This document shows, piece by piece, positions 20,341-62,872 of a stretch of DNA of 64,000 bases. The position numbers and the translations under genes were made by a program. A model generated the notes under the pieces. That model worked only from the letters and a program-made list of their open reading frames with translations, had not been told where the DNA came from and made no database searches. Each line of letters begins with the position of its first letter. Position 1 is the first letter of the stretch. The stretch spans positions 1,116,001 through 1,180,000 of the forward strand of contig NW_027138407.1 of NCBI RefSeq assembly GCF_035084215.1, in the 5' to 3' direction. Origin of the DNA: Heptranchias perlo. Its lineage: Eukaryota.

Positions 20341-20354
20341 GTGTCCAGTGAAAC

Positions 20355-20945: not shown

Positions 20946-21279
20946 ATGTTCTGGATTTACAGAGTTTCCCTCCTGATTTATACTCTGATCTGCACGGATG
21001 TCAATGGTGAAGAAGAGGTGATACAGCTCCCTCGGGCGACGGTTGTTAGTGAAGAGGGAATCGTATCCGTGAACTGCTCCGCTACCGTTGCATTTGACTT
21101 ATTGCACTGGTACAGACAGCACCCCAATCAAACACTCCAACATCTGGTAATGGCAACAAGAGGGGCGGATAAAAACGGGAGGATCTCTGCTTCAATCGGG
21201 GTTGGTAATAAACTCAGTACCCTGACTGTGAGAGACGCCAGCGTGACAGATACCGCTACCTATTTCTGCGCCGTGAGGC
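20946..21279 (+). CDS. TRAV: TCR alpha/delta V segment, leader and V in a single exon, open frame
   Basis: Signal peptide MFWIYRVSLLIYTLICTDVNG, Cys (VNC), WYRQ, DTATYFCAV, followed directly by an RSS. Confidence 0.93.
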
Positions 21280-21318
21280 CACAGTGTAACAAACTTACAG
21301 ACAGTCCGTACAGAAACC
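21280..21318 (+). other. 23-RSS
   Basis: cacagtg + 23 nt + acagaaacc. Confidence 0.95.
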
Positions 21319-23277
21319 TGCAGTGAGGGGGAGCGCCGCTCTGCTGTGTTTTGAGTAACGGGATTGGGAGGGGTCCGTGTTTCATAATCGGAGACAACAA
21401 GAACAGAACATTAGGAAATAGAGAAGAGAGAGATTTAAATAAAGTCAGAAATAAAGAGAGTTGGAAACACAGTCAGAGGAAAACAAAGAAAAATCACTGA
21501 GGAAAGGATGAGAGGGAGAAAGAGAAAGAAAGCATTGGAATAATAATCGGACTGCAGATGACAGCAAATTAAGAAAGGAGTGAAAGAGCAATAAAATAAT
21601 GCCAGAAATAAAGAGAATTGGAAACCGGTAGAGGTAAAGAATGAGAAAGCATTATGGAAAGAATGTGTGTGAGAAAGAGATAGAGAAATAAAGCATTGTA
21701 ATAATGAGAGGGATTGAGACCAGCAATCCAGGAAAGAAGGGAAAGATAAAAGAAAGCGAAGGAAGTCAGGAACACAAAGAGAAAGGCGAAGAGAAAGCCA
21801 TGAAGAAAGAAATCCATAAGAAAACTAAGACACGCTTCCCTTCAAAATCACTCTATTTGCACAGTTTAATTGTCTCCAACACTTCTTCCAATAACCTGCA
21901 GCTGGAAACAACCCGAGAGATAAACACCTTCATTCTCCCCATTATCCTGACAGCATAAAGTTCTCAGAGTCACCGCCAGAGGGCAACGTGGTCACATGTT
22001 TCACACCGCCCCCTGGAAACTCGGTCCGAGTTTGTTGCTCCGACAAAACCACTTCCGGTTTGTGTCAATATCTGAAAACCACCTGCCTTTGTGTTTGGAG
22101 ATTTCAGCGAAGTTTTTATTCATTTTCCCGCTTTTGTTGGCTACGGTTCATCGCCAAGCTGTGTCTCCCCAAGGATATCTATTATTTCCTTTCAAATGGA
22201 CCAAATAAGTGTGAAACTTCTGATGGTTTTGTCAGCGACGTTTGGAAAATGTATCTTAAATATTAACTGTATAGAGTGAAGAACAGGCTAATGGAATGAT
22301 ATGATGTGACTGTAACCCGGATGAGGATTTTATCCCGTGTCAATAGCCATTTTCCTGACCCATGTGATAATTTCAATGCAGTTTAATGACGCCCATTGTT
22401 AGCTTCGTTAAGGCTGAATCTAACGGTTTCAAGTCACATTTGGATCCAGTGATCTCGTCGCCGCTCTCTCCAGAAATAGTGAGAAGAATTTTTCTCAAAG
22501 TGACAAAAATAGAGTGTGAATGTAGATGAAGATGTTCAGTTTATTTCACTCACTGTCACGAATCAGACTGAGGTTCTTTGTGTGGGTGGGATGGGTTCAT
22601 TCATTTTCTGCTGGGGACACACAAGGGGTAGATTTGCTCTGGTCTGTGGGATAGCGACATCTCGAACGGAGAGGAAAATCTCTTTTAAAATTGTTTCAAC
22701 CAAACAGTAAACTCATTATTATAGAATGAATTGATAATTTCACTAGTAATAGCGACCAGAGGAAATCTACCACATCGATTGGAACCAAAGATTCATCAAA
22801 GTGACAGATTAAGGCCTGTTAAATATGATCCGAATCAAACTAATTTTAAAATTTTCCTTCAAAGAAAATATTTGCAGGGCTATGGGGAAAGAGCAAGGGG
22901 AGTGGTAGTAACGGGATAGCACTTTCAAAGAGCCGCCACAGGCACGATGGGCTGAATGTCCTCCTTCTGTGCTCTACGATTCTATGAACCGGACAATACG
23001 CTCATTCGGAGACTGACTGCATCTTGAACATCAGCCTCTCCGACGAAACCGGTTATCAATTGCAAATTATTGAGACAAACCTTGTGGTAACACTGCCTGC
23101 GGCAGCCGTGCACACGGCTTCTGTTCGCAACTCTCGCCTTGCCTGCCCTGTGTCATTGGAAAGATTGCTGCAGCTGTTGCCTGATTGGTTGGATTAACAG
23201 TGCAGTTGTGCGGGGATCTGTATTCCTGCTCCGAAAGAGGACTTCCTGACTACAAAGCTACAAACTCGAGGAGCATC

Positions 23278-23800
23278 ATGCAGAACGGTATTGCACGGCA
23301 CCTGAACATTATATCACTTCTCAGTAAGTATTTCCTTCCCAGTTAAAATCCATTCTCCCCCTGACTATTGTAACCCCGATGCTATTTTGGTGAAATGANN
23401 NNNNNNNNNNNNNNNNNNNNNNNNNNNNNNNNNNNNNNNNNNNNNNNNNNNNNNNNNNNNNNNNNNNNNNNNNNNNNNNNNNNNNNNNNNNNNNNNNNNN
23501 NNNNNNNNNNNNNNNNNNNNNNNNNNNNNNNNNNNNNNNNNNNNNNNNNNNATATTAATATTATTTTTTATTAGAATGGCGCCACCAAGACGCAGTTTAA
23601 CCGTCGGTTCCTGATATGATGATTGAAGAGGAAAGTAATGTCACACTAACCTGCACCTTGAGAACAGGCCATCCTAACTCTTATGTGTACTGGTACAGTC
23701 AGCACCCCAGGAAACCTCCACAGTACGTGCTTTATATTTATGCAGGGACGCATATCCGGAACCACGATTTCACTCATCGATTCGCTCCCACGTTTAATAC
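23278..23800 (+). pseudogene. TCR V pseudogene, 3'-truncated
   Basis: Phase-1 leader 23278-23323 (gtaagt donor); V exon from 23575 has an in-frame TAA in FR1; VTLTC and YWYSQHP motifs; no YYC or RSS. The intron contains the N gap. Confidence 0.85.
23399..23551. other. Assembly gap
   Basis: Run of N. Confidence 1.
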
Positions 23801-23989
23801 TGTCTATATCCTCCTTTATATCGGCTGTGGGTGTTTCTAATAGTCAGTGAGCCGCTCTTTTAATGGGAGCCTCCGGCACTGAAAACAGAACAACATTAAA
23901 TATTTCCCACGTTTCCCTCACCTTACAGATTGACCCTGTTAAAGGGTGAACATTGGGCTTAATCCCCGTCGAGTGCTCTGCTCCCCCTC

Positions 23990-24070
23990 TGACGTCATGA
24001 AATGGAGAACAAAGGAGCTGTGAGCTGATTGGTTCTCACCTGCTGACTCGTTCAGGGTTGAACCAATCGG
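23990..24070 (+). promoter_or_regulatory. V-type promoter: CRE (TGACGTCA) and two CCAAT boxes
   Basis: tgacgtca at 23990-23997; ctgattgg ~24025; aaccaatc ~24061; 100-180 bp upstream of the leader ATG at 24170. Confidence 0.6.
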
Positions 24071-24169
24071 CAGGGTGCCCGGATATTACTCACCATCTTT
24101 CCGACTCTTGACGAAAATAATTCCAGGTTCAACCCTTCTGTTCAAATCCGCCATCAACTCTCCGCAAAC

Positions 24170-24412
24170 ATGTTGGGCGTGACTTTTTATGTATTCGTCG
24201 CTGCTGCAACTCTGTTAACTGGTAAGTTCGCAAGTTACCGTGTTTCACATCTGTATCATACATTATGTTTAACCGGTCGGTTCCTGTAACACACAAATAT
24301 CAATAGATCGATCCGAAATGAAAAAACAACCCGGATCCACCTTGACTCAACACTGAAGACTCTTTCGTGATCTCCACAGACTTCCACGGTGAACGACAGC
24401 GCACGAGTTGAG
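24170..24412 (+). pseudogene. Orphan intact leader exon plus V-exon stub
   Basis: MLGVTFYVFVAAATLLT-G|gtaagt (24170-24221); acceptor at 24379 gives DFHGERQRTS* only. Confidence 0.7.
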
Positions 24413-24623
24413 GTGAGAATACAGGCGAATGGCAGACTTCCCCGCCTCGCCGGGGTCAATGACTGAGTTTGACATACACACGAGTCTTAAACACACAGAT
24501 CATTTGGAGTTCTCCCTTCACATCACAAGAGGTGAAGACGAGGAACTGATCCCGTTTGGAGATGCAGAAGGTTCATTAAAGGACGTTTTGTTCAGTCGAT
24601 CCAAGTACCTTCCCGTTGCAGCC

Positions 24624-25069
24624 ATGAGTTGTGGGGGAATATATTTCTGTTTAGCTGCCCTGATTTACTTCTGAGGTAAGTGTTGAGTGTGACGGGCTGA
24701 TTCCGTGGACAGACAGAGTGAAATGATTTTTTTAAATTTAATATCACTCTGGGCTCTTGCAGGACATTGTCGAGGAGACTCCGTTTTCCAGTCACCAGCT
24801 GCAACCACAGTTATTGAAGGAGACGATGTTCAGTTGTTCTGTAATTACACAGCTACAAGCACCAGCAACCCTTACCTACTCTGGTACCGCCAGTATCCCA
24901 GCGGATCCATAGAGTACCTTCTGCAGAGAAACAAATACAGCCAGAACCAAGAGAAAATTCCAGGGGATCGTTTTTCTGCCAAGCTCGATGATTCGACTCA
25001 AAGCGTTCCGCTGAATGTGTTTGAAACAGAGCTGACAGACTCCGCGGTGTATTACTGCGCACTGAGCCC
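24624..25069 (+). pseudogene. TCR alpha/delta V with intact V exon (24763-25069) but a TGA stop in its proximal leader (24624-24675)
   Basis: Leader MSCGGIYFCLAALIYF*G|gtaagt; V exon DSVFQSP..LFC..WYRQYP..DSAVYYCALSP is open. Confidence 0.88.
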
Positions 25070-43068: not shown

Positions 43069-43179
43069 CTTAAAATAGCCACACTCTGGCCGTCAGCAGG
43101 ACATTGAAAGCAACGCACTTCAAAAAGAGAACTCTCAATCCCAACACGGTCAAAGACAGAAAATTCAGCCTCGGTAGAT
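43069..43179 (-). CDS. TRDC: TCR delta constant region, TM/cytoplasmic exon
   Basis: (D)LPRLNFLSLTVLGLRVLFLKCVAFNVLLTARVWLF*; TM Arg and Lys typical of TCR alpha/delta; no FETD alpha-CPM; gtgag donor 1 nt after the stop, implying an untranslated last exon. Confidence 0.92.
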
Positions 43180-43390
43180 CTGTGTTAATTATTAAATTAA
43201 AGAGTTGATTTAGTGAAACAAACCTACGGAATTTCACTAAAATAAATATACCTGTACCACAAAATTGGAATGTATTGCTCGATCTAGCTGGCTGGTTATT
43301 ATACATCTATCTATGTATCTATCCATCTCTCTTTTTTTTCTGTCTGTCTGTTTGTCTTTTCTCGAAACATATTTAACATGAGGCACTGAC

Positions 43391-43462
43391 CTGTTTGGGT
43401 GTCCTTTATTCCTGCTCTGGAATTATTTGAACGTTTTCCACAATCAGGCTTTCTGCCGGGGC
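43391..43462 (-). CDS. TRDC: TCR delta constant region, connecting-peptide exon
   Basis: tttgcag|..PGRKPDCGKRSNNSRAGIKDTQT|gtcagt; 72 nt, phase 1-1; carries the interchain Cys. Confidence 0.88.
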
Positions 43463-43635
43463 CTGCAAACAAACATGTAAAGGATTTATTGAGTAAATTG
43501 CTTTGTTGTTGCTTTGTGGTTATTATTATCACTGTTACTATTATTGTTACTGGTAGTAATAATGGAGAAAGTAATAATAAAGTAGTAATATTGATTATTC
43601 ATCCTATTATTGATCACAGTCGGACTTCGATGATT

Positions 43636-44103
43636 GTGTCAGCCGTGGCTCAATGGTACCAATATGGCTTTTGTATCAGAAGCTTGTGAGTTCTGATCCC
43701 ACTCCAGAGACTTGAGACCATAATACTAGGCCGACACTACGAGTGGCAGTATTGTGGGAGCGCTGCAATGTAGGAGGTACCGTCTTTCGTTTGATACGTT
43801 TAACAGAGGCCTCGTCTGTCCTCTCCAGTGGATGCAGAAGATCCCACGGGACCATTTCGAAGAAGAGCAGGGAAGATCTCCTCGGTGTCCTGGTCAATAT
43901 TTATCCATCAACCAACATCACTCAAACAGATTAGCTGGTCATTTATCACATTGCTTTGTTTGTGGGATCTCCCTGTGCACATATTGGCTGCTGCGTTTCC
44001 CTACATTACAACAAAGTTTACACGTCAAACAGTACTTCATTGAATGTAAAGCGCTTTGGGAATTCCTGAGACTGTCGAAGGCACATTATAAATGTAAGTT
44101 CTT
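43636..44103 (+). mobile_element. tRNA-derived SINE in the C-delta intron
   Basis: gtcagccgtggctcaatggta..gagttctgatccc head; gtaaagcgctttggg...tataaatgtaag tail. Confidence 0.75.
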
Positions 44104-44129
44104 TATTTATGAAACATTTTATTACTCAC

Positions 44130-44450
44130 GGGCTGCATAATCCTGGCTGTCGCTTTTTGCATAGAAAGATCGAGCCCTGTGTTTTGCCTCACACGTGACA
44201 TTTACTGAATGTTTGGATGAATTGAAAGAGAGGAACCCTGAGCTCCTGTAATACCCGTTGTTTAATAAGTGATTGGATCTCGTGACATTGGTCTTTGGGA
44301 CAGTGATTGTATCCATGAAGAGCCCAATCTCTTTGGGGGAGAATTCCGACACCAGACATACCGCCGCCGTATCGGCACTGTCCCCGTCCCCATCTTTTAT
44401 CACGGGCGGGTAAAAGACCGACACGGTAGGCTCTTTGGGAGTTTTGTCCT
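44130..44450 (-). CDS. TRDC: TCR delta constant Ig (C1) exon
   Basis: ttttcag|(K)DKTPKEPTVSVFYP..TAAVCLVSEFSPKEI..NVTCEAKH..DYAA|gtgagt; 321 nt, phase 1-1, open. Confidence 0.9.
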
Positions 44451-46029
44451 CTGAAAATTAAAGAATAGAACGGAGAAATTATTCAGAATCCACCAATGTG
44501 AGCACAGTGGTAGATTAATAAATGACTAATAATGAAATTCGATTATGAAATAATAGTCCACACATTTTTTTCAAAAAGCAGCCGCTCGAATCTGTTCTGC
44601 TGTTCAATTAGATCATGACTTATCTGTATCTGAACTCCATTTAGCCGCCTTGGTACTGTACCCCTTAATATCCTTGCCTAACAAAATCTATCAATCTCAG
44701 TTTTGAGATTTTCAATTGACCCCCAGCCTCAACATAGTTCCAGATTTCCACTTCCCTTTGTGTGAAGAATTGCTTCCTGATATCACCCCTGAAAGACCTA
44801 GCTCGAACTTTAAGGTTATGACCCATTACTCTGGACTCCCCCACCAGAGGAATAAATATTTCTCTGTCTACCCTGTCAAATCCTTTAATCATTGAAAAAC
44901 CCTCAACCATCCCTGTTCAGAAACATCCCATTTTCCAATAACTCTGTTCACAGAAATTTCTCTCATCTCCCTCCCCTCAATGGATATTTTAAATTAATGA
45001 TGCCTCGCAAAAATGTTAGTTGCTCAAATCCTTAGATAATGAGGCAAAAGTATCTGAACCCATTGACTCCAGTTCCCTCCATAAAAATGCGATTTATTTT
45101 TTTCCCAGCAAATATAGATTACTGGTTCAATTCCATGAAACAACACAATTCACGGGATCAGACAATTGGGGTTTTATGGATTAGTTGTGCTTGTGTAAGA
45201 TTGGCTTTTGCGAGAGAAATCCAACCCATACTATCGAAACGTACATTGATCGCAAAATAGCGGCACACAATGATTTGTGAATCTAGATTACTGTTATTTG
45301 CAATTCATGAGTATGCGACAGGGGCTATTTGAACCAAGTCAAGTCTACACTGAAATAGGTTCAATTTCCAAACGTAAGAACATCTGTATATCCACCACCG
45401 AACACGATGTTAAATTTCAAAAAATGGTCTATCTGTGCACATCTTCAAATTTCTTCATGTCCTGCACCAAATAAATAGGAACACAACACAACGTCTCAAA
45501 TATGCAATGTGTATGCAATGATTTAAGGCCCCCTATATTAATCCTGGAGCAATGATTCAACAAGCAACATCAGGAATGATTCGGCAGACACTGAAGCCAC
45601 CGCTGGTTTCCTTTCCCTCGCGGATATGCGGATAGTGAAAACCTCTCAATTGTATCCAATTTATTATCTTTATTGAAGTCATGTATCCTCGCGCATAATC
45701 GCTGGAAAATTGCGTCTGATATTGAAGGGGAAAGCATCAGATTATCTGATCATTATCACTTCGCTGTTTGTGAAGCCTTGCTGTGAGCAAATTGCCTGCC
45801 GCGTTTCTTACATTACAAAAGTGAGCACACTTTTAAAGTACTTCATTGGTTATAAAGCGCCTTCGGACGTCCTGAGGGAGCGAAAGGCGCTATATCAATG
45901 GAAATCTTTCATTCTTTGTTCATTTCTTTCTAAAAATCGTTACACGTCCGCCCATATTTAGCCGATACCACATGCCATGCGTCTTCTATTGTCACAAAAG
46001 GACTAGTAATGTGTTTAAATGTTACATAC

Positions 46030-46119
46030 TTGGCTCTACAATCACTTCAGTTCCGTCTCCAAATGTGAGTTCAGCAGCATCCCCTAATCCACACAGTGAT
46101 AAGTACCCAGCGAAAAACC
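46030..46119 (-). CDS. TRDJ: Intact J-delta (46030-46091) with 12-RSS
   Basis: ggtttttcg + 12 nt + cactgtg; GLGDAAELTFGDGTEVIVEP; gtatgt donor in phase 1. Confidence 0.93.
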
Positions 46120-46336
46120 CACACAGCGCCACCAGGTCTAATTCCACCTCATCGCAGCAAAAAGTGGACACGTTGTTGGAAAAGCGAACTGGGTACCGCA
46201 AACCCCTGTTAATGGGGCAAATTATTTTAACCGCGATTTAATAATAGATACCTGGTCCCTCTACCAATATTCACCAGAATGCAAATACCAGTCTACAAGG
46301 GGGAGAACGAGAAAATATCCTAACATTTTACTTAAC

Positions 46337-46429
46337 CGTTTCTAAAATAATTCTGGTCCCACTTCCGGATATTAGTTTAGTGGTAGTTTGCCAACTTCCT
46401 GCGCATCAACAGCTGAACAGACAAAAACC
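46337..46429 (-). pseudogene. Pseudo-J
   Basis: Perfect nonamer ggtttttgt + 12 nt, decayed heptamer tgatgcg; TTKLISGSGTRIILET (F replaced by S); donor doubtful. Confidence 0.75.
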
Positions 46430-46709
46430 TGTTCCAGGAGAGCTGTAAACTGTCTGGACTGTAGCTTAATAGAAGCACCAGGGGCTTAGACCGTGGCCTC
46501 ATCTTGCTGAATTACCTCCTGGATATATTTAGAAGTGTTGCTTAATTGTCTTTCGCCGTTACACACGCAGGTCAGTGAAAGGTCTCCCTCTAGTGCATAC
46601 TTGTGTGTTCGTGCTTAGGACTGGATATTAGTTTAAGGGAAAGACCCTAACTTTACATCATACACTAAACCGCCCTGAATTGAGATAAAGAAGACCCAAA
46701 TCTACTTAC

Positions 46710-46765
46710 CCCGTTGCACAATCAATCAGGTCGCCAGTTCCCAATGTCAGCTTATCACCCAACCA
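46710..46765 (-). pseudogene. Pseudo-J (frameshift/stop)
   Basis: GDKLTLGTG, then a shifted T*LIVQR and a gtaagt donor; no recognisable RSS. Confidence 0.7.
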
Positions 46766-46873
46766 ATACTGTTATGTAAAATATAACGGTTATGTATAAA
46801 TATAACTAAAATAAGGCGCCAAATAGTAAAAGGAGAAGTTCTTGAGAGAGAGACCAAATTGAGGAGTAGATAC

Positions 46874-46930
46874 TGGGATCCAAAATCAGCCTGTTTCCAT
46901 TCCAAAACGTGAGCTTTTATTGTCGCGGTA
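46874..46930 (-). pseudogene. Pseudo-J
   Basis: KLTFWNGNRLILDP|gtatct (FGxG became FWxG); heptamer decayed to taccgcg. Confidence 0.7.
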
Positions 46931-47229
46931 TGTTACATTTCGTTGAATCTTGTAATAAGATCACTTGGACTCTCCCCCACATCTCCCAGTGACTGATTCG
47001 CTTGTTCCTGAAGCATAGGATCGATAAGATTACGAGTCATATCTTTATGCACTGGCGGTCTTGGAGCGTTCCCGCAATGTGATCACAGCAATAAATATCC
47101 AGGGGAAATAAAATTGCAAAATGAACAACATGTAAAACCTTAACGGTCAGGGGATAACCGTTGCTAGATTGTAACCAAGCCTTCCTGGGGGTGTTGAGAA
47201 TGTTGTTGTACCGTTCTGTGTAGGTGGAA

Positions 47230-47269
47230 GGTTATTGTACGACCACTTAAGCAGACTCAAACTACTGTG
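47230..47269 (-). other. RSS of the supporting V (24-nt spacer, 23-type)
   Basis: cacagta + 24 nt + acaataacc. Confidence 0.8.
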
Positions 47270-47580
47270 TGTATCGGTGCGCGGACTCAGTGCACAATGA
47301 TACACAGCGGAGTCACTCGGTTGTAGTTTGGAGATGCTTAACCGGCTGGTTTTCTCGGCAGGATCGATAGAAGCAGAAATTCGGCCCGCGGCAGCGTTTT
47401 CATTATTCCCTTCTCCTGAAGTGTGTCTCTGTAGGAGGTATTTCGGAGCCTGCCCTGGGCACTGACTGTACAAGTATAGTGTGTACGGACAGAAGCTTGA
47501 AAATTCGCAGCTTAAAGCAACGGTGTCACCGGCAGCAGAGGTTTGTAGAGGCGGACTCTGGGACACCGATAATCTGGAAT
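47270..47580 (-). CDS. TRDV: Leaderless NAR-TCR-supporting V-delta exon
   Basis: cctgcag|(D)SRLSVSQSP..ALSCEFSSFCPYTLYLYSQC..DSAVYHCALSPRTDT; extra CDR1 Cys; no leader exon found upstream; in phase with the NAR J donor. Confidence 0.9.
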
Positions 47581-49641
47581 CTGCAGGATAAAAATTGGGA
47601 GATTAGTCTGTCTTTAAAGGCTGTTTAGACACTTGTCAATCGTATGAACAGTTCTGCCTCTAGCGGTAATGTTGTTCTTCATTTGAAGCCGATTCGGACT
47701 TTATTCACTTTCATTGGAAAAAAGTACCCGAGGGGAGAAGAGGAGAATGTTGTTTTACGCAGCGAGTTGTTATGATCTGGAATGCGGTGCCTGAAAGGGC
47801 GGTGGGAGCAGATTCTATCGTAACTTTCATTTTATTTCTACACCGTGGTCGCTCACTCTCTGCTGTTTGAGGTTTCCCGCCATACTGAGAACTTGCCCCA
47901 GAGTCTCTCATTTATCCGTGGGATCAGTCTGTGCAGTTTCCGCAGTTGTTTTACTGTTACTCACTGGGAACTGTTTCTTCCTAGTTTCTAATAATGTCAA
48001 TTCCTTCAGACCATTGGTTGAATCTCTCCGGGCGGCGTTTTCTCTGAGTTTTAAAATATATAGAATCTGCAGAACGCCATTCGGCCCTGCTGGTCTGTGC
48101 CGGTGTTTAGATTCCAAACGAGCCTCCACCAACTCTAATTACCACTTTCCACCCTGACCCCCCAACCCGTATTTCTCTATTCCTTTCGCCCTCATGTATG
48201 TCTCAATACTCCCCTTAAATATATCAATGTTATCAGCTTCAACCACTCCGTGTGGCAACACGTTCCACATTCTCACCACTCTCTGCGTAAGTAAATTCCT
48301 CCTAAATTCTTTACTTTTACTGTTAGTGACTATCTTTTATTTATGACCCCTTGTTCTGGATTCACCCACAAGTGGAAATCGTTTCCCCACATCCACCCTA
48401 TTGAACACCTTCATAATTTTAAAGACCTCTTATCAGGTCTCCTCGTACTCTTCTCATTTCCAGAGAACGAAGCCCCGGCCTGTTCAACTTTTCCAGAAAG
48501 GTGTGGATTGCTGCTGATGTCTTTTCTCAGGAGTATAAGAAATGCAAAGCCGAGAAAAGTCTTTGAGTCCGATCGAAACCCATCCCTCCGGTAAATGTAT
48601 TTCCACCGGTGCCGGATTGCACTTTGAACGGCCCAGGGGTCGGTGTCTCCACATTCCCGCTTGGCCGGCAATGGGCGATATTTCACTCCCTTTCAGTGAA
48701 TTATTTCTTGATGATTCTAAATGGACTTTTCTCCAGCCTGTGCTTATTCCCTCGGGTGTTCCTGTTCTCCTTTATGAGAACATTTGCGCCTCGCACTCAC
48801 TCTCTCACTGCCCAATGTTGTTTCAATTAACATTAACCAAGGCTCCAGGTAAATTAATGCAAACCGATCTCTCAAATACTGAAATTAAATATGGAAAACT
48901 GTCTGTAGTTCGATGCTTTCACATTTCGACTTAAACGCGGAGCATGGAGATAAATGACTGTTCATTTGAAGGCAATTGAAATAAATATTAGATAAAATGC
49001 AATTAATCTCAGTCACCGGATGTCCGATCGTGATGTGCCATCGGTCTATTGTATCTGAAGCCCCGCCGTGTTTTGCTGCAGTTTTTCTGCCACTGGAGTT
49101 ATCGGAGGGTCCGATGTAGTATTGGGTTTACTCGACCGGTACCTCATTCACACTGCCCGGCACGGACTGCCAGCTCCTGACCAGGAGAGAGCTCTGAAAC
49201 TCCCGCCTTGCTCAGAGGGACAGGCAGAGCTCCCTCAGTCACAGTTAACACCGAAAGTGGAGGCCGGAGTGTCGACAATCTGCGGTCATTTACACCAACA
49301 AGGGATCAAAATGAGAGATTCCTGGATTTTTATGGGATCTCCTGGATCCCCGTTAAACCAAAGATGGTCCTGATGGGGTCAAACCCTCGACTGCCTGTTC
49401 CGTGGAGGTGTGTGTGTGTGTGTGTCGGGGGAGGGGGGGTGTTTCACTCATCTTCTCTACGGAATCACACCCAATCCCGACTCACGGATCATATTCTGGT
49501 CCTGAATTTAAAAATGAAATGGAAATAACCCCTTAGAAAGTCGCTATATTTTACTTTGAGGAGATAACAATCACAATAATAAGCTGACAGTGAATATTAA
49601 CCGGGACAGTCTGTAACACGGCGGGGTTTGGAGTCACTTAC

Positions 49642-49743
49642 CGGCTGTGACGGTCACCACGGTCCCGGGTCCATCCACATCATAATATTTCCAACCATCT
49701 TCACCACAGTCACACCGCTCTCAGTCACCCTGGTACAAGAACC
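49642..49743 (-). CDS. NAR-type J (49642-49704) with 23-RSS
   Basis: ggttcttgt + 23 nt + gactgtg; EDGWKYYDVDGPGTVVTVTA|gtaagt; IgNAR-like xGxGTVVTV. Confidence 0.92.
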
Positions 49744-50042
49744 ACCGACATCTCAATCTGCCGCACACCTCACCAGACAGTCCCCGCTCCCCAATTATTC
49801 CAGGGATTTTACATCAATGAACAACATTCCATGTTTCATAGTCCCAGTCGGTTCAAACTGTTCTTTCTGTGACTCTCAGCTCTTTGTAAAATGGACCAGG
49901 TACATAAACGGACAAAAAAATGTCAAAGAAAGATCACTGAAAGCAAGAAATTACAATAAAAATAATCCAGAATACAGCGATAATGACATCAAACCTACAA
50001 TTCAGGATCCCGCCGTGAGAATTGATATTTTCATTGTATAGA

Positions 50043-50070
50043 GGTATTTGCTGAGGTCTTTTCCACTGTG
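50043..50070 (-). other. 12-RSS 3' of the NAR V
   Basis: cacagtg + gaaaagacctca (12 nt) + gcaaatacc. Confidence 0.9.
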
Positions 50071-50555
50071 ATTGCCCGGGAATAGTACTTGTAGTTTGCT
50101 TTACAGTAATAGGTGGCGCTATCTTCAACTCTCGCATCTCTAATTTCCAGCGAAAACGTCTTTTCTGCATTATTCGTTGACGCAACAAATCGTTCTCCGC
50201 CGTAGATCAGCTCCCACTCTGCCCCAGTCCGGCTTTGTCGGAAGAAATCGCCACTCTCGAAACGATAGTCATAGTAAAAATGCCGTTTGAAAACGCAGGT
50301 GATCGTGAGAGACTGACACTCCTTCCTGGTCACCACACGCGGGGTCTGTGTCACTGACTGGCCGAAAGAGCCTGGAAATTAAATAAAGAGTTTAATGAGC
50401 CATTAAAGCCGAACCACACAACAGGGCTAAAACCGAATCAGTGCAATTCGAATGGACTCGGGCTGCTTTGTATTAAATTCGCACAACGTCCGTTTGGTTG
50501 AACGGCACTCACGGGGTAAACAGACACACAGGATGAAAACAAGGAGGATTCCCAT
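50071..50555 (-). CDS. NAR-TCR V segment: leader 50513-50555, V exon 50071-50371
   Basis: MGILLVFILCVCLPR/SFGQSVTQTPRVVTRKECQSLTITC...GGERFVASTNNAEKTFSLEIRDARVEDSATYYCKA; IgNAR-like short FR2/CDR2; extra FR1 Cys; TATA-like tataaa ~50580. Confidence 0.92.
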
Positions 50556-51349
50556 CGTTCTGCTGCCTGGATCTGACGGTTTATATGACGGAGAGCAGGA
50601 GACTGCAAAACTGGACTGCCCTGGGAGACAGTACCTGAGAGCTATACTTAAATACTTTAGGGGATCAAGTTCATTTGCAGAGGGCATTGTCCCGTTGATC
50701 ATTGGTGGTCCTCGCGGCTCCCGGATCTCTGGCTGTGCGTTGTGTGAATAAGCGACAGGTTCAAAGACGGACCTGCAATTTTATGACGCATCATCTGGAC
50801 TCTGAGCCGATCTGAAAGCCCCTCCCACATTAGTCTGACGTACAAGGGGGAGTTCTGTCAGCAGTGGCGACCGCCTCCTTTGCCTCACAGGAGTGAGCTG
50901 GGTGGTCTGTCCATATATTTTTATTGGGTGGTGTTTGTTGAGGGTGGAATGTTGGCCCAGAACACCGGGAGAATCCCCCGCTCTTATTCCAATAGTGCTG
51001 GGTGATTCTTTAACATCTCCCTGAACAGGCTGACGGGAACTCGGTTAAACCTTTCATCCATAGGACCATGTAGAACTCCCTCAGTCCAGCAACTGTGCGT
51101 CAGGTTACAATATGAGACAGTCCAGTGCCACTTTCAATATACAGGCAGATATACACAATATACTTGGAGAATAGACTGTCACTGTAATTGAACCAAACGC
51201 TTCGTGCATCGTCCACTTCTGTGGTTTGAACACCTTCTCTCGCTGCCCTCTGGTGGCGACGATATGTAACTACAAGTTTAACAGCTGTTCGAATCTGCCC
51301 CCGGGGCTGCTCTGCTGGGACAACCAACGTTAAAGTCAGCTATGTGCTG

Positions 51350-51720
51350 CACTTGTGCAGGAGCTGACACTGGGACACACACATGCCGTTCAGTGCCAGA
51401 CGGGAGTGAATCGTTCCCTTTTACTCACTGTGTACTGCACATGTTAAGGAGCTGAAACTGAGACACACACGGGCCGTACAGTACCAGACGTGAGTGAATC
51501 GTTCCCCTTTACCTGCAATTTGCTGTACATGTACAAGTGCTGAACCAGAAAAACACATACGGGCCGCATAGTACCAGACGGAAGCGTATCGTTCCCTTTT
51601 ACCCACTGTGTACTGTACATGTTAAGGAGCTGAAACTGAGTCGCACACGGGCCGTACAGTACCAGACTATAGTGAAATGTTACATCTTGCCCGCTGTCTG
51701 CTGTACATGTACAGGAGCTC
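51350..51720. repeat. ~90-bp tandem repeat, about four copies
   Basis: acacgggccgtacagtaccagacg..aatcgttcccttttac..tgtacatg recurs. Confidence 0.8.
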
Positions 51721-51734
51721 ACACAAATTCATTG

Positions 51735-52360: not shown

Positions 52361-52714
52361 TTCGCTGAATGTTTCTTGATTGAAAAACGTCGTGAAATAT
52401 TTCAGTTTCATCGCATAAAACACACAAAAAAAATCACATTTCTGTAGCATTTTAGATATATGAAAGATTCAATTAGGGGATAGAAATCTGTCAGGTAGAT
52501 CTCAACCTAAAAGATGTGAGTGACCTCTCAACCTCAAAGATTTTCTGATGCGATCAGAGACTTTACCCAATAAACCATCAGAGAATCAGCAAAGACCAGG
52601 GAATCGGGGCCTTTTAAATATCCCATAAAATTAATTTGCATAGTCACAAACGTTAAATCTTGAATGGTCCAGCAGAATTCGAGAGCATTATAGAACGCAA
52701 TCGCGGGTGGCTGC

Positions 52715-56711: not shown

Positions 56712-57149
56712 ATGTGCTCCCTGTGTTCCTTACTGATAATAATTGTTTTGCTGCCTGGTGAGTCGATGGTAAAATGGTCAGTGAGTGTTTCTTGGCTTAT
56801 ATTTACTCACAGAGTTTTGACACATTCTATATTTTGTTGCAGGAACCAGTGGCGAAAAATCACTGTCCCAGGATCCGCCTGAATTAACGGTTCAAGAAGG
56901 ACAGATCATAATACTGAACTGCAGTTACTCCACAAGCAATACATTTCCCTACCACTTCTGGTACATCCAGTATCCCGGGGAAGCTCCGAGATATTTACTG
57001 AGGAGATATGGTTCGGGAAAGGGAGAGATGTCTCCAGATTTCTCAGACCGGTTCTCTGCTGATTTGGACGAACGCGAGAAAACGGTTCCTTTAAATGTCA
57101 CCGGGGCTCTTGTCTCAGACTCTGCCGTGTATCACTGTGCACTGAGCCA
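56712..57149 (+). CDS. TCR alpha/delta V segment, intact (leader 56712-56757, V exon 56843-57149); missed by the ORF track
   Basis: MCSLCSLLIIIVLLPG/TSGEKSLSQDPPELTVQEGQIIILNCSYS..FWYIQYPGEAPRYLL..DSAVYHCALS; RSS cacactg + 23 + acaaaaacc at 57150-57188. Confidence 0.93.
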
Positions 57150-58535
57150 CACACTGTTATATGGGCGCATTTAGATCGTACAAAAACCAGCAAACGCCTC
57201 TCACTGAATAAGGCCTGTGACCTGGATTGTAATCCGATAACACAACAGAAACCAAATTAGAAAAATGAACAGATGGATCAGTAAATGCAGTCCGGAAAAT
57301 TTAATTCTCGGTTGGAGCAGAAATGCAGATCAACTGCACTGCTGATCCAACCAATGCCAAACAGGGAGCAGCTGCAGCAATCTCTCCATTAACACAGGGA
57401 AGGAAAGGCGGCTCAGAGAGAGAGCAGCAAACTAAAGGTGTGGGCGGGGCTGCCGCAGCCTCAGAACTGAGGGAATTCAAGATTCTGTTTAAACAGAAAG
57501 TGCGCGGCACCGTTCAGCTGCAATCGGAGCTGATGGAGCGGAAGGGCGTTGGTTGGGTTTGGAGAGGTTAGTTGACAAACTGCTCCTGCCCACTGAGCAA
57601 ATGATGGGGACAAATAGAGTGGGAGAGAAAAGAAGGGATTACACAGCAGCAGAAATAATAAGTGGGTTTAATCATCTTTAATCCAGATCGTTGAGAGACA
57701 ATTGAGTACACGTGATTTTTATATATGATCCATAAACCCTAAATCCATTCAATAACCTCGTTCTAAATCGGATTGAACCGAATCCGCCAGCAGGGGGAGC
57801 CAAACTCATGCATGGTAATTAGACCGTCACGTGATGTAAATACCAAAACCAATTGTGATGGGAGCACGGGATAACGTCACAATCGGGCCGGGCCCCTGCA
57901 GTTTGTGGATGGAACAATAAGCTGAACAGGTCCCGGGTTAACCCTCCCCTTCTCACTCTCCGGCTCGTTCAATTCCCAGTCCCTGTGAGGGATTCAGTCA
58001 GACACGTTTCTAAAAATACTGGCGCCAGTGCTGGACCGTAACTACTGGATTATATTAAACTACACAGGTTAGCAGATTGATGCAAAGGACTTGCGCAGGG
58101 ACTTCATAGAATTACCGATCAGACATATCTATCGTAGACAGTTGGGGAGATGGATGGTTACACACACAGACAGACACAAATTAAGATTGATCCCGTTAAA
58201 CCTTCTATTCTTTTATTTCCCTCTCTTCACGGGCAGACTATGTGCAAATCCATTGGGGTTAATCCCCGTCCAGTTCTCTGTTCTTTTCTTTCACGCAGTC
58301 GTTGCCTTCTGTTATCCCTGATGATGACGATTGCCCAGCCGATCCGTGGGAGGAGCTTTTTTTATGTCACGTGGTCTCTTGTCCACGCCTTCTCTTGAAC
58401 GTGAAGATGACGTTTCCCCAGTTTTTAATTCCAGCTGCACCTTGTGTTTTGCAGTGGGTTATAGACCGACACTTTCTCTCTCATATCAAAGGACGGCTTT
58501 TGACAAGAAAGCGGCGACACAGCTCAGCTCAGGCA

Positions 58536-58994
58536 ATGGCTTTCATGTTAGTGGGTATATATTCGCTGTGCACGCGTTTCCTTTTGTTGCCGGGTGAGTA
58601 TTTTACTTTCGTGGTATGAAAAAATGCACCTTAATCTTTTATTTTCCTACGATTTTATTATTCCATTGATTTGGCTATTGCAGTGGTCCTTGTTAATGGA
58701 AACAGCGTGACACAGACGGTGCCGATATTAAAGCACAAGGAAGGAGAGACAGTGACATTAAACTGCACTTATTCCACAAGCTACGGAAGCTATTACTTGG
58801 ATTGGTACCGACAACATCCACAGAAAGGGCCGGAGTATCTCCTGCAGAGACACAGTAACGGTCAACAATATAAAGCAGATAATCTCGGAGAACGGTTCTC
58901 TTCAGAGCTGAAAGCAACGGACGGATTCACCAGTCTGACCATCTCTGCCTTGGAGCTGACTGATAATGCTGTGTATTACTGTGCCCTGGAACCT
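58536..58994 (+). CDS. TCR alpha/delta V segment, intact (leader 58536-58593, V exon 58684-58994)
   Basis: NSVTQ..VTLNC..WYRQHP..DNAVYYCALEP; consensus RSS cacagtg + 23 + acaaaaacc at 58995-59033. Confidence 0.95.
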
Positions 58995-59499
58995 CACAGT
59001 GACTCAAACTGCAGGCAGCCTCGAACAAAAACCAGCTTCCTGTTTCTACTCAAATGGCACAGCTTCCTCGGGCTGATCCTGACCTCAACGAATTCAAAAC
59101 AATTTGTTGCTGAAGCCTTGGTCATAATCATCTTAGAGAGAGAACCAAAAAACATTATTTACACCAGAACTGAGCAGATCTATTGATTGGAAAAGTGAGA
59201 GAGCGCAGGATGAGTTAGAGAGACTGGTGTCCAGATTAATTCCAATGCATTTTGTCACATCATCCAAGGCAGACGCGAATATAATGTTGAGGAATGGAGT
59301 GTTTCTGGTGAAACATTTAAAAGCTTGTTGTTGTGATCTAGAATGCACTGCCTGACAGGGTGGTGGAACATGATTCAATTGTAGCTTTCGAAAGGAAGTT
59401 GGAAATATACTTGAAAGGGAAAAACATTGCAGGGCCATTGGCAGAGTGGGGTAATTGGATAGTTCTTTCAAAAAGCTGGAACTGGCATGATGGGCCAAA

Positions 59500-60100
59500 G
59501 TCACAAAAACAGCCATAACCCTTTGCTTCCTTCCACTGAGCCAATTATGGATCCAACTCTCCCTTGGATCCCATAAGCTTTTACGTTCGTGATGAGTTTG
59601 CCATGTCAAAAGCCTTGCACCAATCCATGTAGACTACATCAAAAGCACAACCCTCATCGACTCTCCTTGCTATCTCCTTAAAAAATTCAATCAAGTTAGT
59701 CAGACACGACCTTCCATTCACAAATCCATGCTGACTGTCCTTGATTAATCTATACCTTTCTAAATCACGATTTATGCTGTCCCTCAGGTTTTCTTTTCCA
59801 ATAATTTGCCCACCACCGAGGTTAGTCTGACAGGCCTGCAATTATTCGACCTCTCCCTTTCTCCATTTTTCAACAACGGCAGCTGTCCTCCAGCACCACG
59901 CCTGTCGTCAGAGAGGATTAGAAAATGATGGTCAGAGCCTCCGCTATTTCCTCCCTTGCTTCTTTGAACAGCCTGGGATACGTTTCATCCGGGCATGGAG
60001 ATTTATCTACTTTCAAAAATGCTAAACCACTTAATACTCCCTCTCTCACTATATTTATTCCATCTAATATTTCACACTCCTCGTTAACTACAATGTTATT
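59500..60100 (-). mobile_element. CR1 ORF2 fragment
   Basis: DSQHGFVNGRSCLTNLIEFF; VDKSPCPDETYPRLFKEAREEIAEAL. Confidence 0.8.
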
Positions 60101-62429
60101 TCCCGGGAGATAAACACTAAATTGTAGCTCAGTTTCATGTCGGATCCTATCGACTTGTGCACAGTAACTGCTGGCAGTTGCAGGCCGAAAGAGGCTCCTG
60201 GAGAAGGCAGCGCTGTTGTGTATCAATCTGAGCCGAACACCACGACAGTGTGCCCGTCACACACAGATCTCTGTGAATTGTGATCATAAAGTGAACCTGT
60301 GAAGGGATGTCCGGGCTCAGCATTCATGGGGGATAGGGGGAGGGGGAGGGGCGAGACAGCTTATGCGCCAGGGGATCTGCGCGTCATCCTGAATCAGCCC
60401 CTGAAATAGGAACAGAGAATACAAAAAGAGAACAATGTTCTGTGAGATTGGCTCAAATAAGATACTTTAAACCCAGCCAACAGGTGGCGCTGACAGACCG
60501 CTGTTTCCCACCGCCAGTCGTGTTGCGCGAACCATTCGTGTCTGGCATTTTTTTAACATGATGTTTTAAAAAAAATATTTTCGACTTCTCATATTTAAGT
60601 TCATTAATATTATATGGTTAACTTACAGTGTAATAATTTTACACATTAGTTGATTGTAAATGAGCTGGGCACTTCCAGTTGACACTGTTTAGAATTCGTG
60701 AAGTAACTCATCGTTATGACAATTAACTTGGAATGGGTTGGGATTTTCTTATGCTTTCCAGCATCCGCTTTTACCTCCGTATTTGTATCGCAGCTCAGTG
60801 ATGAAGATTTTTGCAGCTGATCTAACAAATCTGCCCTCCCTTTCGTGAGCCTGGGAGTAACAAGGTTTTTCTCTTGATGCAGAGTTATACACATTCCATG
60901 GGGTACATTACTATTGTAGCAATTTCCTTACACATATATTGTATGTGTGTGGTACAGGTGCTAAAGTTAAATAAATGGCATCAACAGGCATTCAATCCGT
61001 TTGACACTGTCAATGTGAGCATCCATTGTAAATGGACTCCACACCCTGGCGGGCATCCCACGTGTTCTCCACTGCATTCCCGGTACATGTTGGGCGTTTA
61101 CACTCACAACTCTCGTTCAAATTCACCTGCAGCTATTTCAACACCACTCATGAAGTATGTATGTTGCCATTTTCCGACCTTATGCACAATACTTTACACT
61201 TTTCAAGATTAACTTTCATCTGCAACAATCGTCTGTTTTATTTTCTCTCTCTCGGGCGGGTGAGTCTACTCAACGGGACCGCGAATGTTTATTTCTCCCA
61301 TGTATTAGTTAGGCCCGGGTGCCTTATACTGTAATATATCTCGCACACTGCACGCCCCAGTCCCCCATCAGAAAGGGAGAGCTCCATCCCCTTTATCTGG
61401 GGCTCGATTTGAACACAGAGTCCCAGGGGCTGAAAGGATTATTTCGGACCTATTGCAAGGACTCGATTCCCCACCGGAGTGAACAGATACCAAGCGCTTT
61501 TCACCGTTTATAAAGTCAAACCAGGCCGAATATCCGGCATATCGGTGAGAAACACATCAGTCGCCTGATTATTGGATGCTGAAGAACAAAGATGACAGAC
61601 GGCCGCCTTTGCCAGGAGCTGGAAAATTAAAACACCGATTACCGAAGCGATCGATGATACAGAACTCACTACCTAGCAGCATTGTGGGAGCACCTTCAGC
61701 ACTCGGACTGCAGCGATTCAAGGCGAAGGCTCACCACCACCTTCTCAAGAGTAACTAGTGATGGGTAATAAATGGCGACCTTGCTATCGACGCCCATATC
61801 GCGAGAATGGGTACAAAAAGCTAAGAGAAACAGCTGGTACAGTATGACAATCAGCACGTGAAATCTTTCTTTGTTTCTGTTATTCGTTCTTTCTTTCACT
61901 CTTTCTTTCATTTTTACTCCATCGATTCTCGTTCTTTCTGTATTTCATTATTTCTCTCCTCTCTCCCACTTTTTCTTTCTCGTTTTCTCGTCTTCATCAC
62001 TTCCGTTCTTCTTTTTGCAATATGAAAAGAAAAATCAATATTTATATTGCACCGCCCGAATATTTCATTTTAACAAGCGGGGTGGAGAAGTGGGGAGGGA
62101 GGGGTGCATAACCAAATAGAAATCCCGCCCAGTGCAATGTCCCTCCTTAATTTGTACCTCTCCTCCTTTAATCTACTGAGCGACATTCTGAATGATGCGG
62201 AGAGGAAGTAGACGAAATACATCTGACGAATCAGCGCTCCTGTTAAAATGTTCTTACCCAATTAATACATTCGGTACATTTTACCAGGAACAGAATTGCA
62301 AGCGATACTTTGTCACCTTCTGTTATATCTTCCTGGCGAACACTTTCTTACTTTACTCAGTGTAACCTGTTGCAACAGGAAATAGAACTGATATTCCAAA
62401 GGGTTGCTGGTGAACATATAATAGAACCC

Positions 62430-62872
62430 ATGTCGTACTGTCATCTCGTTATATTGTGGTTTATGCTCGGTAGGTATGAACATGCCTTATATCTTCTTGT
62501 ATAAATGTGGCGTACATAGATTTTCTAACTCAGTATTGTATTCAACCCAAAGTTAACTTATATTTCAGGGGAGATTCAGGCAAATTCGGTTTCGCAACCT
62601 CAGACCGCGCTCTATGTCACTGAAGGAGATGATGTGAAAATAGACTGCAGCTATACTACAGGCGCCAGTAACCCCGATCTGTACTGGTACCGGTCGCACG
62701 CGAACCAGGCTCCACGTTTTATTTTATACCGAGATAACAGCAGAAAAGAAGAGGCTGATTTTGCCAAGGGAAGATTCGAGGCCGGCCAAACCAATGCAGG
62801 AAAGATGTTTCCTTTAAGGATCACTCGAACGGAAATCCAGGACACCGCCGTATATTTCTGCGGGCTGAGCAG
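62430..62872 (+). CDS. TCR alpha/delta V segment, intact (leader 62430-62469, V exon 62569-62872)
   Basis: MSYCHLVILWFMLG/EIQANSVSQPQ..VKIDC..WYRSH..DTAVYFCGLS; RSS cacagtg + 23 + acaaaaacc at 62873-62911. Confidence 0.94.

What the first reader, a model, noticed from the sequence alone, without database searches (positions are those of the whole stretch)
43069..50600. Self-contained, inverted NAR-TCR mini-cluster with its own J-delta and C-delta, nested in the TCR V array
Seen: within 7.5 kb on the - strand, L-V(NAR)-J(NAR)-leaderless V-delta-J-delta-C/CP/TM. Every junction is phase 1 and open, predicting a three-domain chain VNAR-Vdelta-Cdelta. All conventional Vs on both sides face the other way. 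Known: shark NAR-TCR is a doubly rearranging delta chain, which I recall described as NAR-VDJ plus supporting-V cassettes that use the locus's shared D/J/C-delta; marsupial and monotreme TCR-mu are clustered genes with two V domains and a private C. Inference: this is a TCR-mu-like, cluster-type NAR-TCR gene with a dedicated C-delta paralogue. I do not know of that arrangement being reported in sharks, but I cannot search.
Basis: partly seen in the sequence, partly recalled or inferred. Interest (0 to 1): 0.93.

Follow-up and report, generated by a model that had tools for sequence, protein, structure and literature searches.

The report
Shark NAR-TCR cluster with own C-delta
In the sharpnose sevengill shark, a T-cell-receptor delta gene with an extra antibody-like domain is packed into 7.5 kb together with its own joining segment and its own constant gene, one of several such units, whereas shark T-cell-receptor genes are described as one long shared array.

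Summary
On the minus strand, 50555-43070, lie a leader, a NAR-type V with a 12-RSS, a NAR J with a 23-RSS, a leaderless supporting V-delta with a 24-spacer RSS, one good J with a 12-RSS plus two decayed Js, and C, connecting-peptide and transmembrane exons. All splice junctions are phase 1. All 6 conventional V hits in the window are on the plus strand.

The species is Heptranchias perlo, and NCBI model XP_067833084.1 uses exactly this J3-C-CP-TM. A second model on the same 1.7-Mb contig carries NAR J, supporting V, J and a C that is 81% identical. So this is not the only C-delta.

Contigs of public runs that behave like RNA show a direct supporting-V-to-J3 joint with 4 added letters and no D. 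That one joint is out of frame.

This copy may be impaired. Its supporting V has Leu where 88 of 89 relatives have Trp.

I found no paper describing this arrangement, and two papers call shark TCR loci translocon. The scan had already noted sister clusters elsewhere on this scaffold.

The parts
50513..50555 (-). Leader exon (MGILLVFILCVCLP, phase-1 donor)
   Evidence: Same leader type as the Mustelus NAR-TCR models.
50071..50371 (-). NAR-type V exon with a long tail after the second Cys (CKANYKYYSRAI), probably a germline V-D join
   Evidence: Pfam V-set. Best PDB hits are IgNAR V. Cys in the a-b loop and no canonical Trp.
50043..50070 (-). 12-spacer RSS of the NAR V (CACAGTG-12-GCAAATACC)
49705..49743 (-). 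23-spacer RSS of the NAR J (GGTTCTTGT-23-GACTGTG)
49642..49704 (-). NAR J (EDGWKYYDVDGPGTVVTVTA, phase-1 donor)
   Evidence: 85% identical to the N-terminus of P0021. A germline-configuration contig covers 49664-49835.
47270..47580 (-). Leaderless supporting V-delta exon. It starts right after the acceptor AG, has a Cys in CDR1, and has Leu in place of the conserved Trp.
47230..47269 (-). 24-spacer RSS of the supporting V (CACAGTA-24-ACAATAACC)
   Evidence: The joint lies 1 nt inside the coding end.
46936..47040 (-). First exon of NCBI model XP_067833084.1: start of a germline (sterile) transcript between the supporting V and the Js
   Evidence: Low depth in run X1 over 46920-47119.
46709..46775 (-). 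J1, a decayed J-like element (KLTLGTGDLIDCAT) with no usable RSS
46337..46400 (-). J2, a decayed J. The nonamer GGTTTTTGT is perfect, the heptamer TGATGCG is poor, and it has SGSG in place of FGXG.
46092..46119 (-). 12-spacer RSS of J3 (GGTTTTTCG-12-CACTGTG)
46030..46091 (-). J3, the one canonical J-delta (GLGDAAELTFGDGTEVIVEP, phase-1 donor)
   Evidence: Used in NCBI's model. Joined to the supporting V in a contig.
45245..45312 (-). Cryptic exon in the J-C intron, spliced to the C acceptor
   Evidence: joint 44450->45245 in run X2, contig with 0 differences
44130..44450 (-). C-delta Ig-domain exon (CLVSEFSP)
   Evidence: C1-set. Matches the trd signature CLXXXFXP taken from PMC10322711. Homologues. 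Tree.
43391..43462 (-). Connecting-peptide exon containing a Cys (PGRKPDCGK...)
43070..43179 (-). Transmembrane exon (LGLRVLFLKCVAFNVLLTARVWLF, then stop) with the Arg and Lys of TCR alpha/delta membrane spans
   Evidence: That the motif defines alpha/delta is established knowledge, recalled.
21000..25069 (+). Context: conventional Vs at 21.0 kb and 24.8 kb (23-RSS) and a V fragment at 23.6 kb. They lie downstream of the C and face the other way.
56845..62872 (+). Context: three conventional Vs (56.8, 58.7 and 62.6 kb), each with a 23-RSS. They lie upstream of the NAR V and face the other way.

Best explanation
This is one unit of a family of NAR-TCR 'miniclusters' in the TCR alpha/delta region of Heptranchias perlo. 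Each unit has a leader and NAR V (here with D-like letters already attached and a 12-RSS), a NAR J (23-RSS), a leaderless supporting V-delta (23/24-RSS), one working J-delta (12-RSS) and its own C-delta gene.

How it most likely works: two short deletional RAG joins are made inside the unit, neither needing a D. One joins NAR V to NAR J and removes about 366 bp. The other joins the supporting V to J3 and removes 1,179 bp. Phase-1 splicing then links leader, NAR VJ, supporting VJ, C, connecting peptide and membrane span into a three-domain delta chain that would pair with TCR gamma.

Shown: the segments, their RSSs and splice sites; the supporting-V-to-J3 join; use of the C acceptor; and a second unit on the same contig.

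Inferred: the NAR V-J join; the protein and its pairing with gamma; and that the C serves only its own Vs. This particular copy may be a weak or failing member of the family.
For: - Anatomy, RSS pairing by the 12/23 rule and phase-1 junctions.
- NAR identity of the first V. NAR-TcR hallmarks as listed in PMC1845163 (passages).
- Delta identity of the C: the CLXXXFXP signature from PMC10322711 (passages); a named TRDC relative in Hypanus sabinus; the tree, where the TCR-alpha outgroup is remote.
- NCBI model P0001 maps at 96-100% to J3, C, CP and TM of this window.
- Second cluster, P0021, on the same contig: supporting V 78-79%, C Ig domain 81%.
- Run contigs: joint 46091->47271 with 4 added letters; joints with splice-site ends into the C acceptor at 44450; depth confined to exons and repeats.
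- C-exon variants in those contigs match P0021's residues at 5 of 6 non-synonymous sites (compared by eye). So further C copies are transcribed.
- No D-like element was found between either V and its J.
- No J-alpha array anywhere in the window.
Against: - The only V-J3 junction assembled is out of frame.
- The supporting V has Leu where 88 of 89 related V domains have Trp.
- Two of the three Js are decayed.
- C-exon contigs identical to the window are shallow (depth 3-27 in X2), while variant contigs reach 153-405 in X1.
- No NAR V-J joint was listed. The NAR J region was seen in germline configuration.
- The runs are labelled RNA only as a guess, and all three come from one sample.
- The contig with the J3->C splice has 7 differences in 150 letters, so it probably comes from a paralogue.
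The canonical D-J-C-delta and the other clusters are known only from unchecked scan notes.
Confidence: 0.8

Rival explanations
1. Classical translocon reading: this is the locus's single shared D-J-C-delta, and the NAR V / supporting V cassette merely happens to be the one closest to it.
For: - Papers describe shark TCR loci as translocon (PMC6795676, passages; PMC12227049, section 6).
- Of 69 fetched models with a NAR V plus a supporting V, 63 have no C match.
Against: - A second C, 81% identical, sits on the same contig behind its own NAR J and supporting V.
- Further C variants are present in the run contigs.
- No D segment was found.
- No J-alpha array in the 43 kb downstream.
- Unchecked scan notes place the canonical D-J-C-delta and the J-alpha array more than 300 kb away.
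Confidence: 0.04
2. This copy is a decaying member of the cluster family. It still recombines and is transcribed, but it no longer makes a working chain.
For: - Conserved Trp replaced by Leu in the supporting V (88 of 89 relatives keep Trp).
- The only junction seen is out of frame.
- Two decayed Js.
- Its own C contigs are shallow next to the paralogue variants.
- The transcripts seen from this copy are sterile ones.
Against: - All eight coding exons or segments are open with intact splice sites, and the four working RSSs are good.
- One non-productive junction says little, because contigs drop rare variants.
- Contig depth is a poor measure of expression, as the tool itself says.
Confidence: 0.35
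3. The J3 and C are not private to the NAR cassette. The flanking plus-strand conventional Vs also join J3 by inversion, giving ordinary two-domain, D-less delta chains.
For: - All five intact flanking Vs carry 23-RSSs compatible with J3's 12-RSS.
- In Mustelus asterias and Pristiophorus japonicus, related Cs appear in models without a NAR V (P0023, P0025, P0002).
- An unchecked scan note proposes the same for a sister cluster (s1-883399).
Against: - No such joint or loose end at J3 was among the rows shown (25 loose ends were not shown).
- The only join seen at J3 is with the cluster's own supporting V.
Confidence: 0.3
4. The opposite orientation of the cluster relative to its neighbours is an assembly error.
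For: One N gap lies in the window at 23399-23551.
Against: - The gap is about 19.5 kb from the cluster.
- No N lies between the cluster and the nearest plus-strand Vs at 24.8 and 56.8 kb.
- Internal order V-J3-C is confirmed by joints in the contigs.
- Scan notes report the same layout at several sister clusters (unchecked).
Confidence: 0.03

Closest known systems
Nurse shark NAR-TcR (Criscitiello, Saltis and Flajnik 2006; paper not held, recalled; features as restated in PMC1845163, and PMC12227049)
   Same: - Three-domain delta chain with an N-terminal NAR-type V that has a leader, a Cys in the a-b loop and no canonical Trp.
- A leaderless supporting V-delta with a Cys in CDR1.
- Two separate rearrangements, and a delta-type C.
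   Different: - Here the cassette has its own J and its own C-delta within 7.5 kb, and no D on either side.
- The unit is repeated on the scaffold.
- The classical account (recalled) has the cassettes use the locus's shared D, J and C.
- Three unnamed cDNA-like entries (P0045, P0053, P0095) with different Vs and Js share one C start, as a shared C predicts.
TCR-mu of monotremes and marsupials (PMC7615758; PMC3457774; passages)
   Same: - Tandem clusters that encode two V domains and a private C derived from TCR-delta.
- The supporting V has little diversity. In platypus it rearranges without D segments.
- Repeats lie between clusters, as with the LINE 3 kb downstream here.
   Different: - The N-terminal V is NAR-type, not VH-type.
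- The C groups with shark C-delta.
- The papers treat TCR-mu and NAR-TCR as convergent, so this is analogy, not membership.
Second TCR-delta loci with antibody-like Vs in birds and frogs (duck 'unconventional TCR-delta-2', abstract of PMC5278385 in the listing; Xenopus, recalled)
   Same: An extra C-delta copy serving a special set of V genes.
   Different: - Those chains have a single V domain of VH type.
- They are not repeated compact clusters.
Shark immunoglobulin miniclusters (PMC12227049)
   Same: A compact V-(D)-J-C cassette repeated many times, with rearrangement inside the cassette and partial germline joining.
   Different: - The C here is a TCR-delta membrane-anchored C.
- The cassette holds two rearranging V-J pairs.

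Membership tests
NAR-TcR (doubly rearranging TCR-delta of cartilaginous fish) | N-terminal V related to IgNAR V | tested here: met
   Best PDB sequence matches are IgNAR V domains (1ver_A 3.8e-14). The first rows printed are 62-68% identical to NAR-TCR gene models.
NAR-TcR (doubly rearranging TCR-delta of cartilaginous fish) | NAR V has a leader, a Cys in the a-b loop and lacks the canonical Trp of WYRK (features as listed in PMC1845163) | tested here: met
   Leader exon 50555-50513; 'TRKECQSLTITC'; 'DFFRQS'.
NAR-TcR (doubly rearranging TCR-delta of cartilaginous fish) | Associated V-delta lacks a leader and has a conserved Cys in CDR1 (PMC1845163) | tested here: met
   The acceptor AG lies directly before framework 1 in phase 1, and no leader exon is present; 'EFSSFCPYT'.
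NAR-TcR (doubly rearranging TCR-delta of cartilaginous fish) | Two separate V(D)J rearrangements | tested here: inconclusive
   Both V-J pairs have 12/23-compatible RSSs. The supporting-V-to-J3 join was seen. No NAR V-J join was listed.
NAR-TcR (doubly rearranging TCR-delta of cartilaginous fish) | Constant region is TCR-delta | tested here: met
   CLVSEFSP fits the trd signature CLXXXFXP and not the tra signature CLXTD (PMC10322711). Relative named TRDC in Hypanus. Groups with shark delta Cs; a TCR-alpha C gave no blastp match.
NAR-TcR (doubly rearranging TCR-delta of cartilaginous fish) | Cassettes use the shared D, J and C of a translocon locus (classical description, recalled; translocon stated) | tested here: not met
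   Own J3 and own C within the unit, and no D found. A second C on the same contig.
TCR-mu | N-terminal V of antibody VH type, and a C-mu found only in mammals | tested here: not met
   The V is NAR-type. The C groups with shark C-delta. No C-mu sequence was in the compared set, so it was not compared directly.
TCR-mu | Repeated clusters of V-(D)-J, V-J and C, with a supporting V that lacks D | tested here: met
   This window plus P0021 on the same contig. Direct V-J3 joint with only 4 added letters. This is analogy of layout only.
Functional V gene by the usual criteria (two Cys and the conserved Trp; IMGT usage, recalled) | Conserved Trp after CDR1 in the supporting V | tested here: not met
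   Leu (TTG) in the window. 88 of 89 related V domains have Trp and 1 has Ser.

The most novel reading that the evidence does not exclude
In the sevengill shark, an early-branching living shark lineage, the NAR-TCR has left the shared translocon and become a family of self-sufficient, D-less miniclusters, each with a private C-delta. This is the same solution that monotremes and marsupials reached with TCR-mu. It may also be the kind of NAR V-J-C cassette from which the NAR V moved between TCR-delta and the IgNAR clusters. The five Mustelus asterias gene models that carry a NAR V, a supporting V and a C (on five different contigs) suggest that the layout is not confined to one species.
Probability: 0.35. 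Interest if true: 0.85.

Novelty: new variant of a known kind. Interest (0 to 1): 0.72.

Why it matters
Shark T-cell-receptor loci are described as translocons, in contrast to the shark antibody miniclusters (PMC6795676; PMC12227049). A repeated NAR-TCR cassette with its own J and C-delta and no D would be the first cluster-type TCR outside mammals.

It would also be a second, independent case of the TCR-mu design: a free single-domain binder on top of a low-diversity supporting V and a private C.

It gives a concrete system for three questions:
- why three-domain delta chains evolve towards clusters;
- how the 12/23 rule is rewired by germline V-D joining;
- how the NAR V moved between TCR and Ig loci.

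It also matters for annotation. NCBI names these genes 'T cell receptor alpha chain MC.7.G5-like'.

Tried and rejected
**Searches that gave nothing**
- The search for homologous proteins with the C exon alone found nothing, because of its length window.
- The PDB sequence search with the C exon gave only antibody light and heavy chains, so it cannot tell delta from other C1 domains.
- The PDB search with the supporting V was dominated by multi-V constructs and was not informative.

**Scans of the window**
- The D-segment scan found nothing convincing. One weak heptamer at 47081 has no 5' RSS.
- A self-comparison looking for inverted duplications flanking the cluster found only transposon and satellite repeats, plus one short inverted minisatellite pair.
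- My first hand reading of the V-J3 joint as in frame was wrong. One search shows it is out of frame, and note 4 corrects note 3.
- My first exon coordinates were off by 1-9 nt at five borders. They were corrected.

**Literature**
- Searches for cluster-type NAR-TCR or multiple shark C-delta genes found no such report.
- The three primary papers (Criscitiello 2006, Deiss 2019, Ott 2021) are not held.
- Table S1 of PMC12227049 lists TCR genes in four species and may bear on the claim, but it is a closed supplement. 'Not in print' is therefore limited to the searchable library.

**Scan notes**
- The search by sequence was blank.
- The orientation of the canonical D-J-C could not be checked.

Full report
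**What is there.** On the minus strand between 50555 and 43070 the sequence holds a complete set of parts, listed here with borders read.
- Leader exon, 50555-50513.
- V exon, 50371-50071. Its best solved relatives are IgNAR V domains (Pfam V-set).
- 12-spacer RSS directly after that V.
- 23-spacer RSS followed by a long J, 49704-49642, with a phase-1 donor.
- Second V exon, 47580-47270. It begins right after an acceptor AG, has no leader, and is followed by a 24-spacer RSS.
- Three J-like elements. Only J3 (46091-46030) has a good 12-RSS and an FGXG motif.
- C1-set exon, 44450-44130.
- Connecting-peptide exon with a Cys, 43462-43391.
- Membrane exon with the Arg and Lys typical of TCR alpha/delta, 43179-43070, ending in a stop.

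All splice junctions are AG/GT and phase 1. Outside the cluster, all 6 V-like places in the window are on the plus strand. Five have a leader candidate and a 23-RSS, and one is a fragment beside the N gap.

**Whose genome, and is the gene model real?** An exhaustive profile search with the C exon alone found 19 proteins. The best is 100% identical over all 107 residues. It is XP_067833084.1 of Heptranchias perlo, on a contig of 1,715,135 bp. It maps back to the window at 96-100% as five exons: a sterile first exon (47040-46936), J3 with its unrearranged upstream flank, C, CP and TM. I searched the exons one at a time and did not search any joined model of my own. NCBI's own models were used by id.

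**Is it delta?**
- The C exon has CLVSEFSP. This fits the trd signature CLXXXFXP and not the tra signature CLXTD, both given in Giorgetti et al. 2023 (PMC10322711, passages).
- Among the relatives is 'T cell receptor delta constant' of Hypanus sabinus.
- In a maximum-likelihood tree of 20 C regions, the window's C sits with other elasmobranch delta-type Cs. A Hemiscyllium TCR-alpha C lies on a branch of length 3.2, and it gave no blastp match to the window's C.

**Is it the only C-delta?** No.
- A second H. perlo model on the same contig (P0021, partial) reads NAR J, supporting V, a J2-like element, a J3-like element, C and TM.
- Its segments match the window at 78-87%. Its C Ig domain is 81% identical.
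- The two Cs are sisters in the tree (support 100/97). Next to them is the C of a conventional-V chain of the sawshark Pristiophorus japonicus (80/65). The Mustelus Cs fall close together, but the fork uniting them is unresolved. The duplications therefore look lineage-specific, or homogenised, and not like an ancient NAR-only C lineage.
- Unchecked notes of this scan report more such clusters at about +22, +107, +201 and +249-254 kb beyond the window. They also report a canonical D-J-C-delta and a J-alpha/C-alpha array 311 and 370 kb before it.
- The order of the canonical parts in those notes suggests they lie on the minus strand, like this cluster. In that case the local plus-strand Vs, not the cluster, would be the inverted elements. 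I could not check this.

**Evidence from public runs.** Three runs of one sample hold parts of the stretch. They are labelled RNA only as a guess. I laid them on 44120-50119. Depth falls on exons and on repeats, and is zero in most of the introns. Joints with splice-site ends are present, so the runs behave as RNA.

The main results:
- One contig in X1 (depth 33) joins 46091 to 47271 with four extra letters. That is full-length J3 joined directly to the supporting V, trimmed by one base, with no D. No differences from the window were listed in that part.
- A contig in X2 with no differences splices a cryptic exon (45245-45312) to the C acceptor at 44450.
- A contig in X3 splices 46030 to 44450, which is J3 to C. 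It has 7 differences in 150 letters, so it probably comes from a paralogue.
- Most C-exon contigs differ from the window at 4 places in about 120 letters and are deeper than the identical ones.
- The NAR J was seen only in germline configuration, and no NAR V-J joint was listed.

Of the nine variant places in the C exon, six change the amino acid. Five of those six give the residue that P0021 has. So further C copies are transcribed.

**What speaks against a working copy.**
- The V-J3 joint is out of frame. It has 2 + 4 + 1 letters at the junction, and the V frame runs into a stop.
- J1 and J2 are decayed.

So recombination within the unit and transcription are shown, but a productive chain from this copy is not. 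The joint could also be a germline-joined allele rather than a somatic event. Contigs alone cannot tell these apart.

**Mechanism.**
- The NAR V ends 11 residues after its second Cys and carries a 12-RSS, while its J carries a 23-RSS. This is what a germline V-D join would leave, and it allows a direct V-to-J join over about 366 bp.
- The supporting V (24-spacer RSS) and J3 (12-spacer RSS) can also join directly, and they do.
- Both joins are deletional and lie inside the unit.
- Splicing in phase 1 would then give NAR V, supporting V and C-delta on one chain.
- Pairing with TCR gamma, and antigen binding by the free NAR domain, are inferred from what is written about NAR-TCR and TCR-mu (PMC3457774; PMC6795676).

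**How it compares with what is known.** The unit meets the sequence hallmarks of NAR-TcR as listed for elephant shark and nurse shark (PMC1845163, passages). It does not fit the classical layout, in which the cassettes use the shared D, J and C.
- A 2019 review states that cartilaginous-fish TCR genes are in translocon arrangement (PMC6795676).
- A 2025 paper that mapped the region in four elasmobranchs says the TCR alpha/delta genes were, 'as expected', translocon (PMC12227049, section 6 read whole).
- Among the 109 proteins fetched here, 69 carry a NAR V and a supporting V. Of these, 63 have no C match. Five Mustelus asterias models (on five different contigs) and one long Cetorhinus maximus model do have one.
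- Three unnamed cDNA-like entries with different Vs and Js share one C start. That fits a shared C in their species, which I recall to be the nurse shark.
- In layout, the closest analogue is TCR-mu: repeated clusters, a private C derived from delta, and a supporting V without D in the platypus (PMC7615758; PMC3457774). This is convergence, not membership.

**Novelty.** Seven literature searches found no report of NAR-TCR clusters with their own C-delta, and no paper on H. perlo T-cell receptors. The three primary NAR-TcR and TCR-delta locus papers are not held, and the supplements are closed. The claim of novelty is limited accordingly.

**Verdict.** The scan itself had already noted and followed up a sister cluster on this scaffold (s1-882942). 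I rate this a new variant of a known kind. It is of real interest to comparative immunology, with the caveat that this particular copy may be a weak member of the family.

Noticed in passing
window 37421-40060 (-): An 879-aa open frame of a non-LTR retrotransposon (endonuclease plus reverse transcriptase, RVT_1 4.6e-38) lies 3 kb downstream of the membrane exon. Related copies sit at 13.2-14.3 kb and 16.0-18.6 kb, 91-98% identical. Such repeats between clusters could drive unit duplication, as proposed for TCR-mu.
   Followed up: partly
window 45245-45312 (-) and 46936-47040 (-): Two non-coding exons feed sterile transcripts into J3 or C. One is in the J-C intron (spliced contig). The other lies between the supporting V and J1 and is the first exon of NCBI's model. 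They may be germline promoters that open the unit for recombination.
   Followed up: partly
window 50043-50110 (-): The NAR V carries a 12-RSS and an 11-residue tail after its second Cys, as expected of a germline V-D join. The supporting V also has a long tail (CALSPRTDT) and a 24-nt spacer.
   Followed up: partly
window 4055-8926 and 10112-11673: A large satellite with a 27-bp unit (about 150 copies, with higher-order periods of 54 to 188 bp) fills about 6 kb upstream of the plus-strand V array.
   Followed up: no
window 20334-20605 and 54843-55126: A 54-58-bp minisatellite occurs twice in opposite orientation (77% over 286 bp). The two copies bracket the block that holds three plus-strand Vs and the minus-strand cluster. 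It could be chance, or a trace of an inversion.
   Followed up: no
window 23589-23798 (+), beside the N gap 23399-23551: A V-like fragment with stops lies next to the only assembly gap. It is either a pseudogene or a V cut by the gap. The gap was left as it is.
   Followed up: no
window 51537-52447 (+): Long open frames rich in Ser, Leu and Pro come from CT-rich simple sequence. They are not a gene.
   Followed up: no
database proteins P0003, P0022, P0026, P0028, P0029 (Mustelus asterias): Five NCBI models on five different contigs (1.1-20.4 Mb) read leader, NAR V, J, supporting V, J and C, with at least two C types. The cluster layout may therefore also exist in a carcharhiniform shark. The loci could not be fetched.
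   Followed up: partly
window 44233-44397 (-), run contigs: Transcribed C-exon variants mix the residues of the window copy and of P0021. This suggests several C paralogues, or exchange between them.
   Followed up: partly
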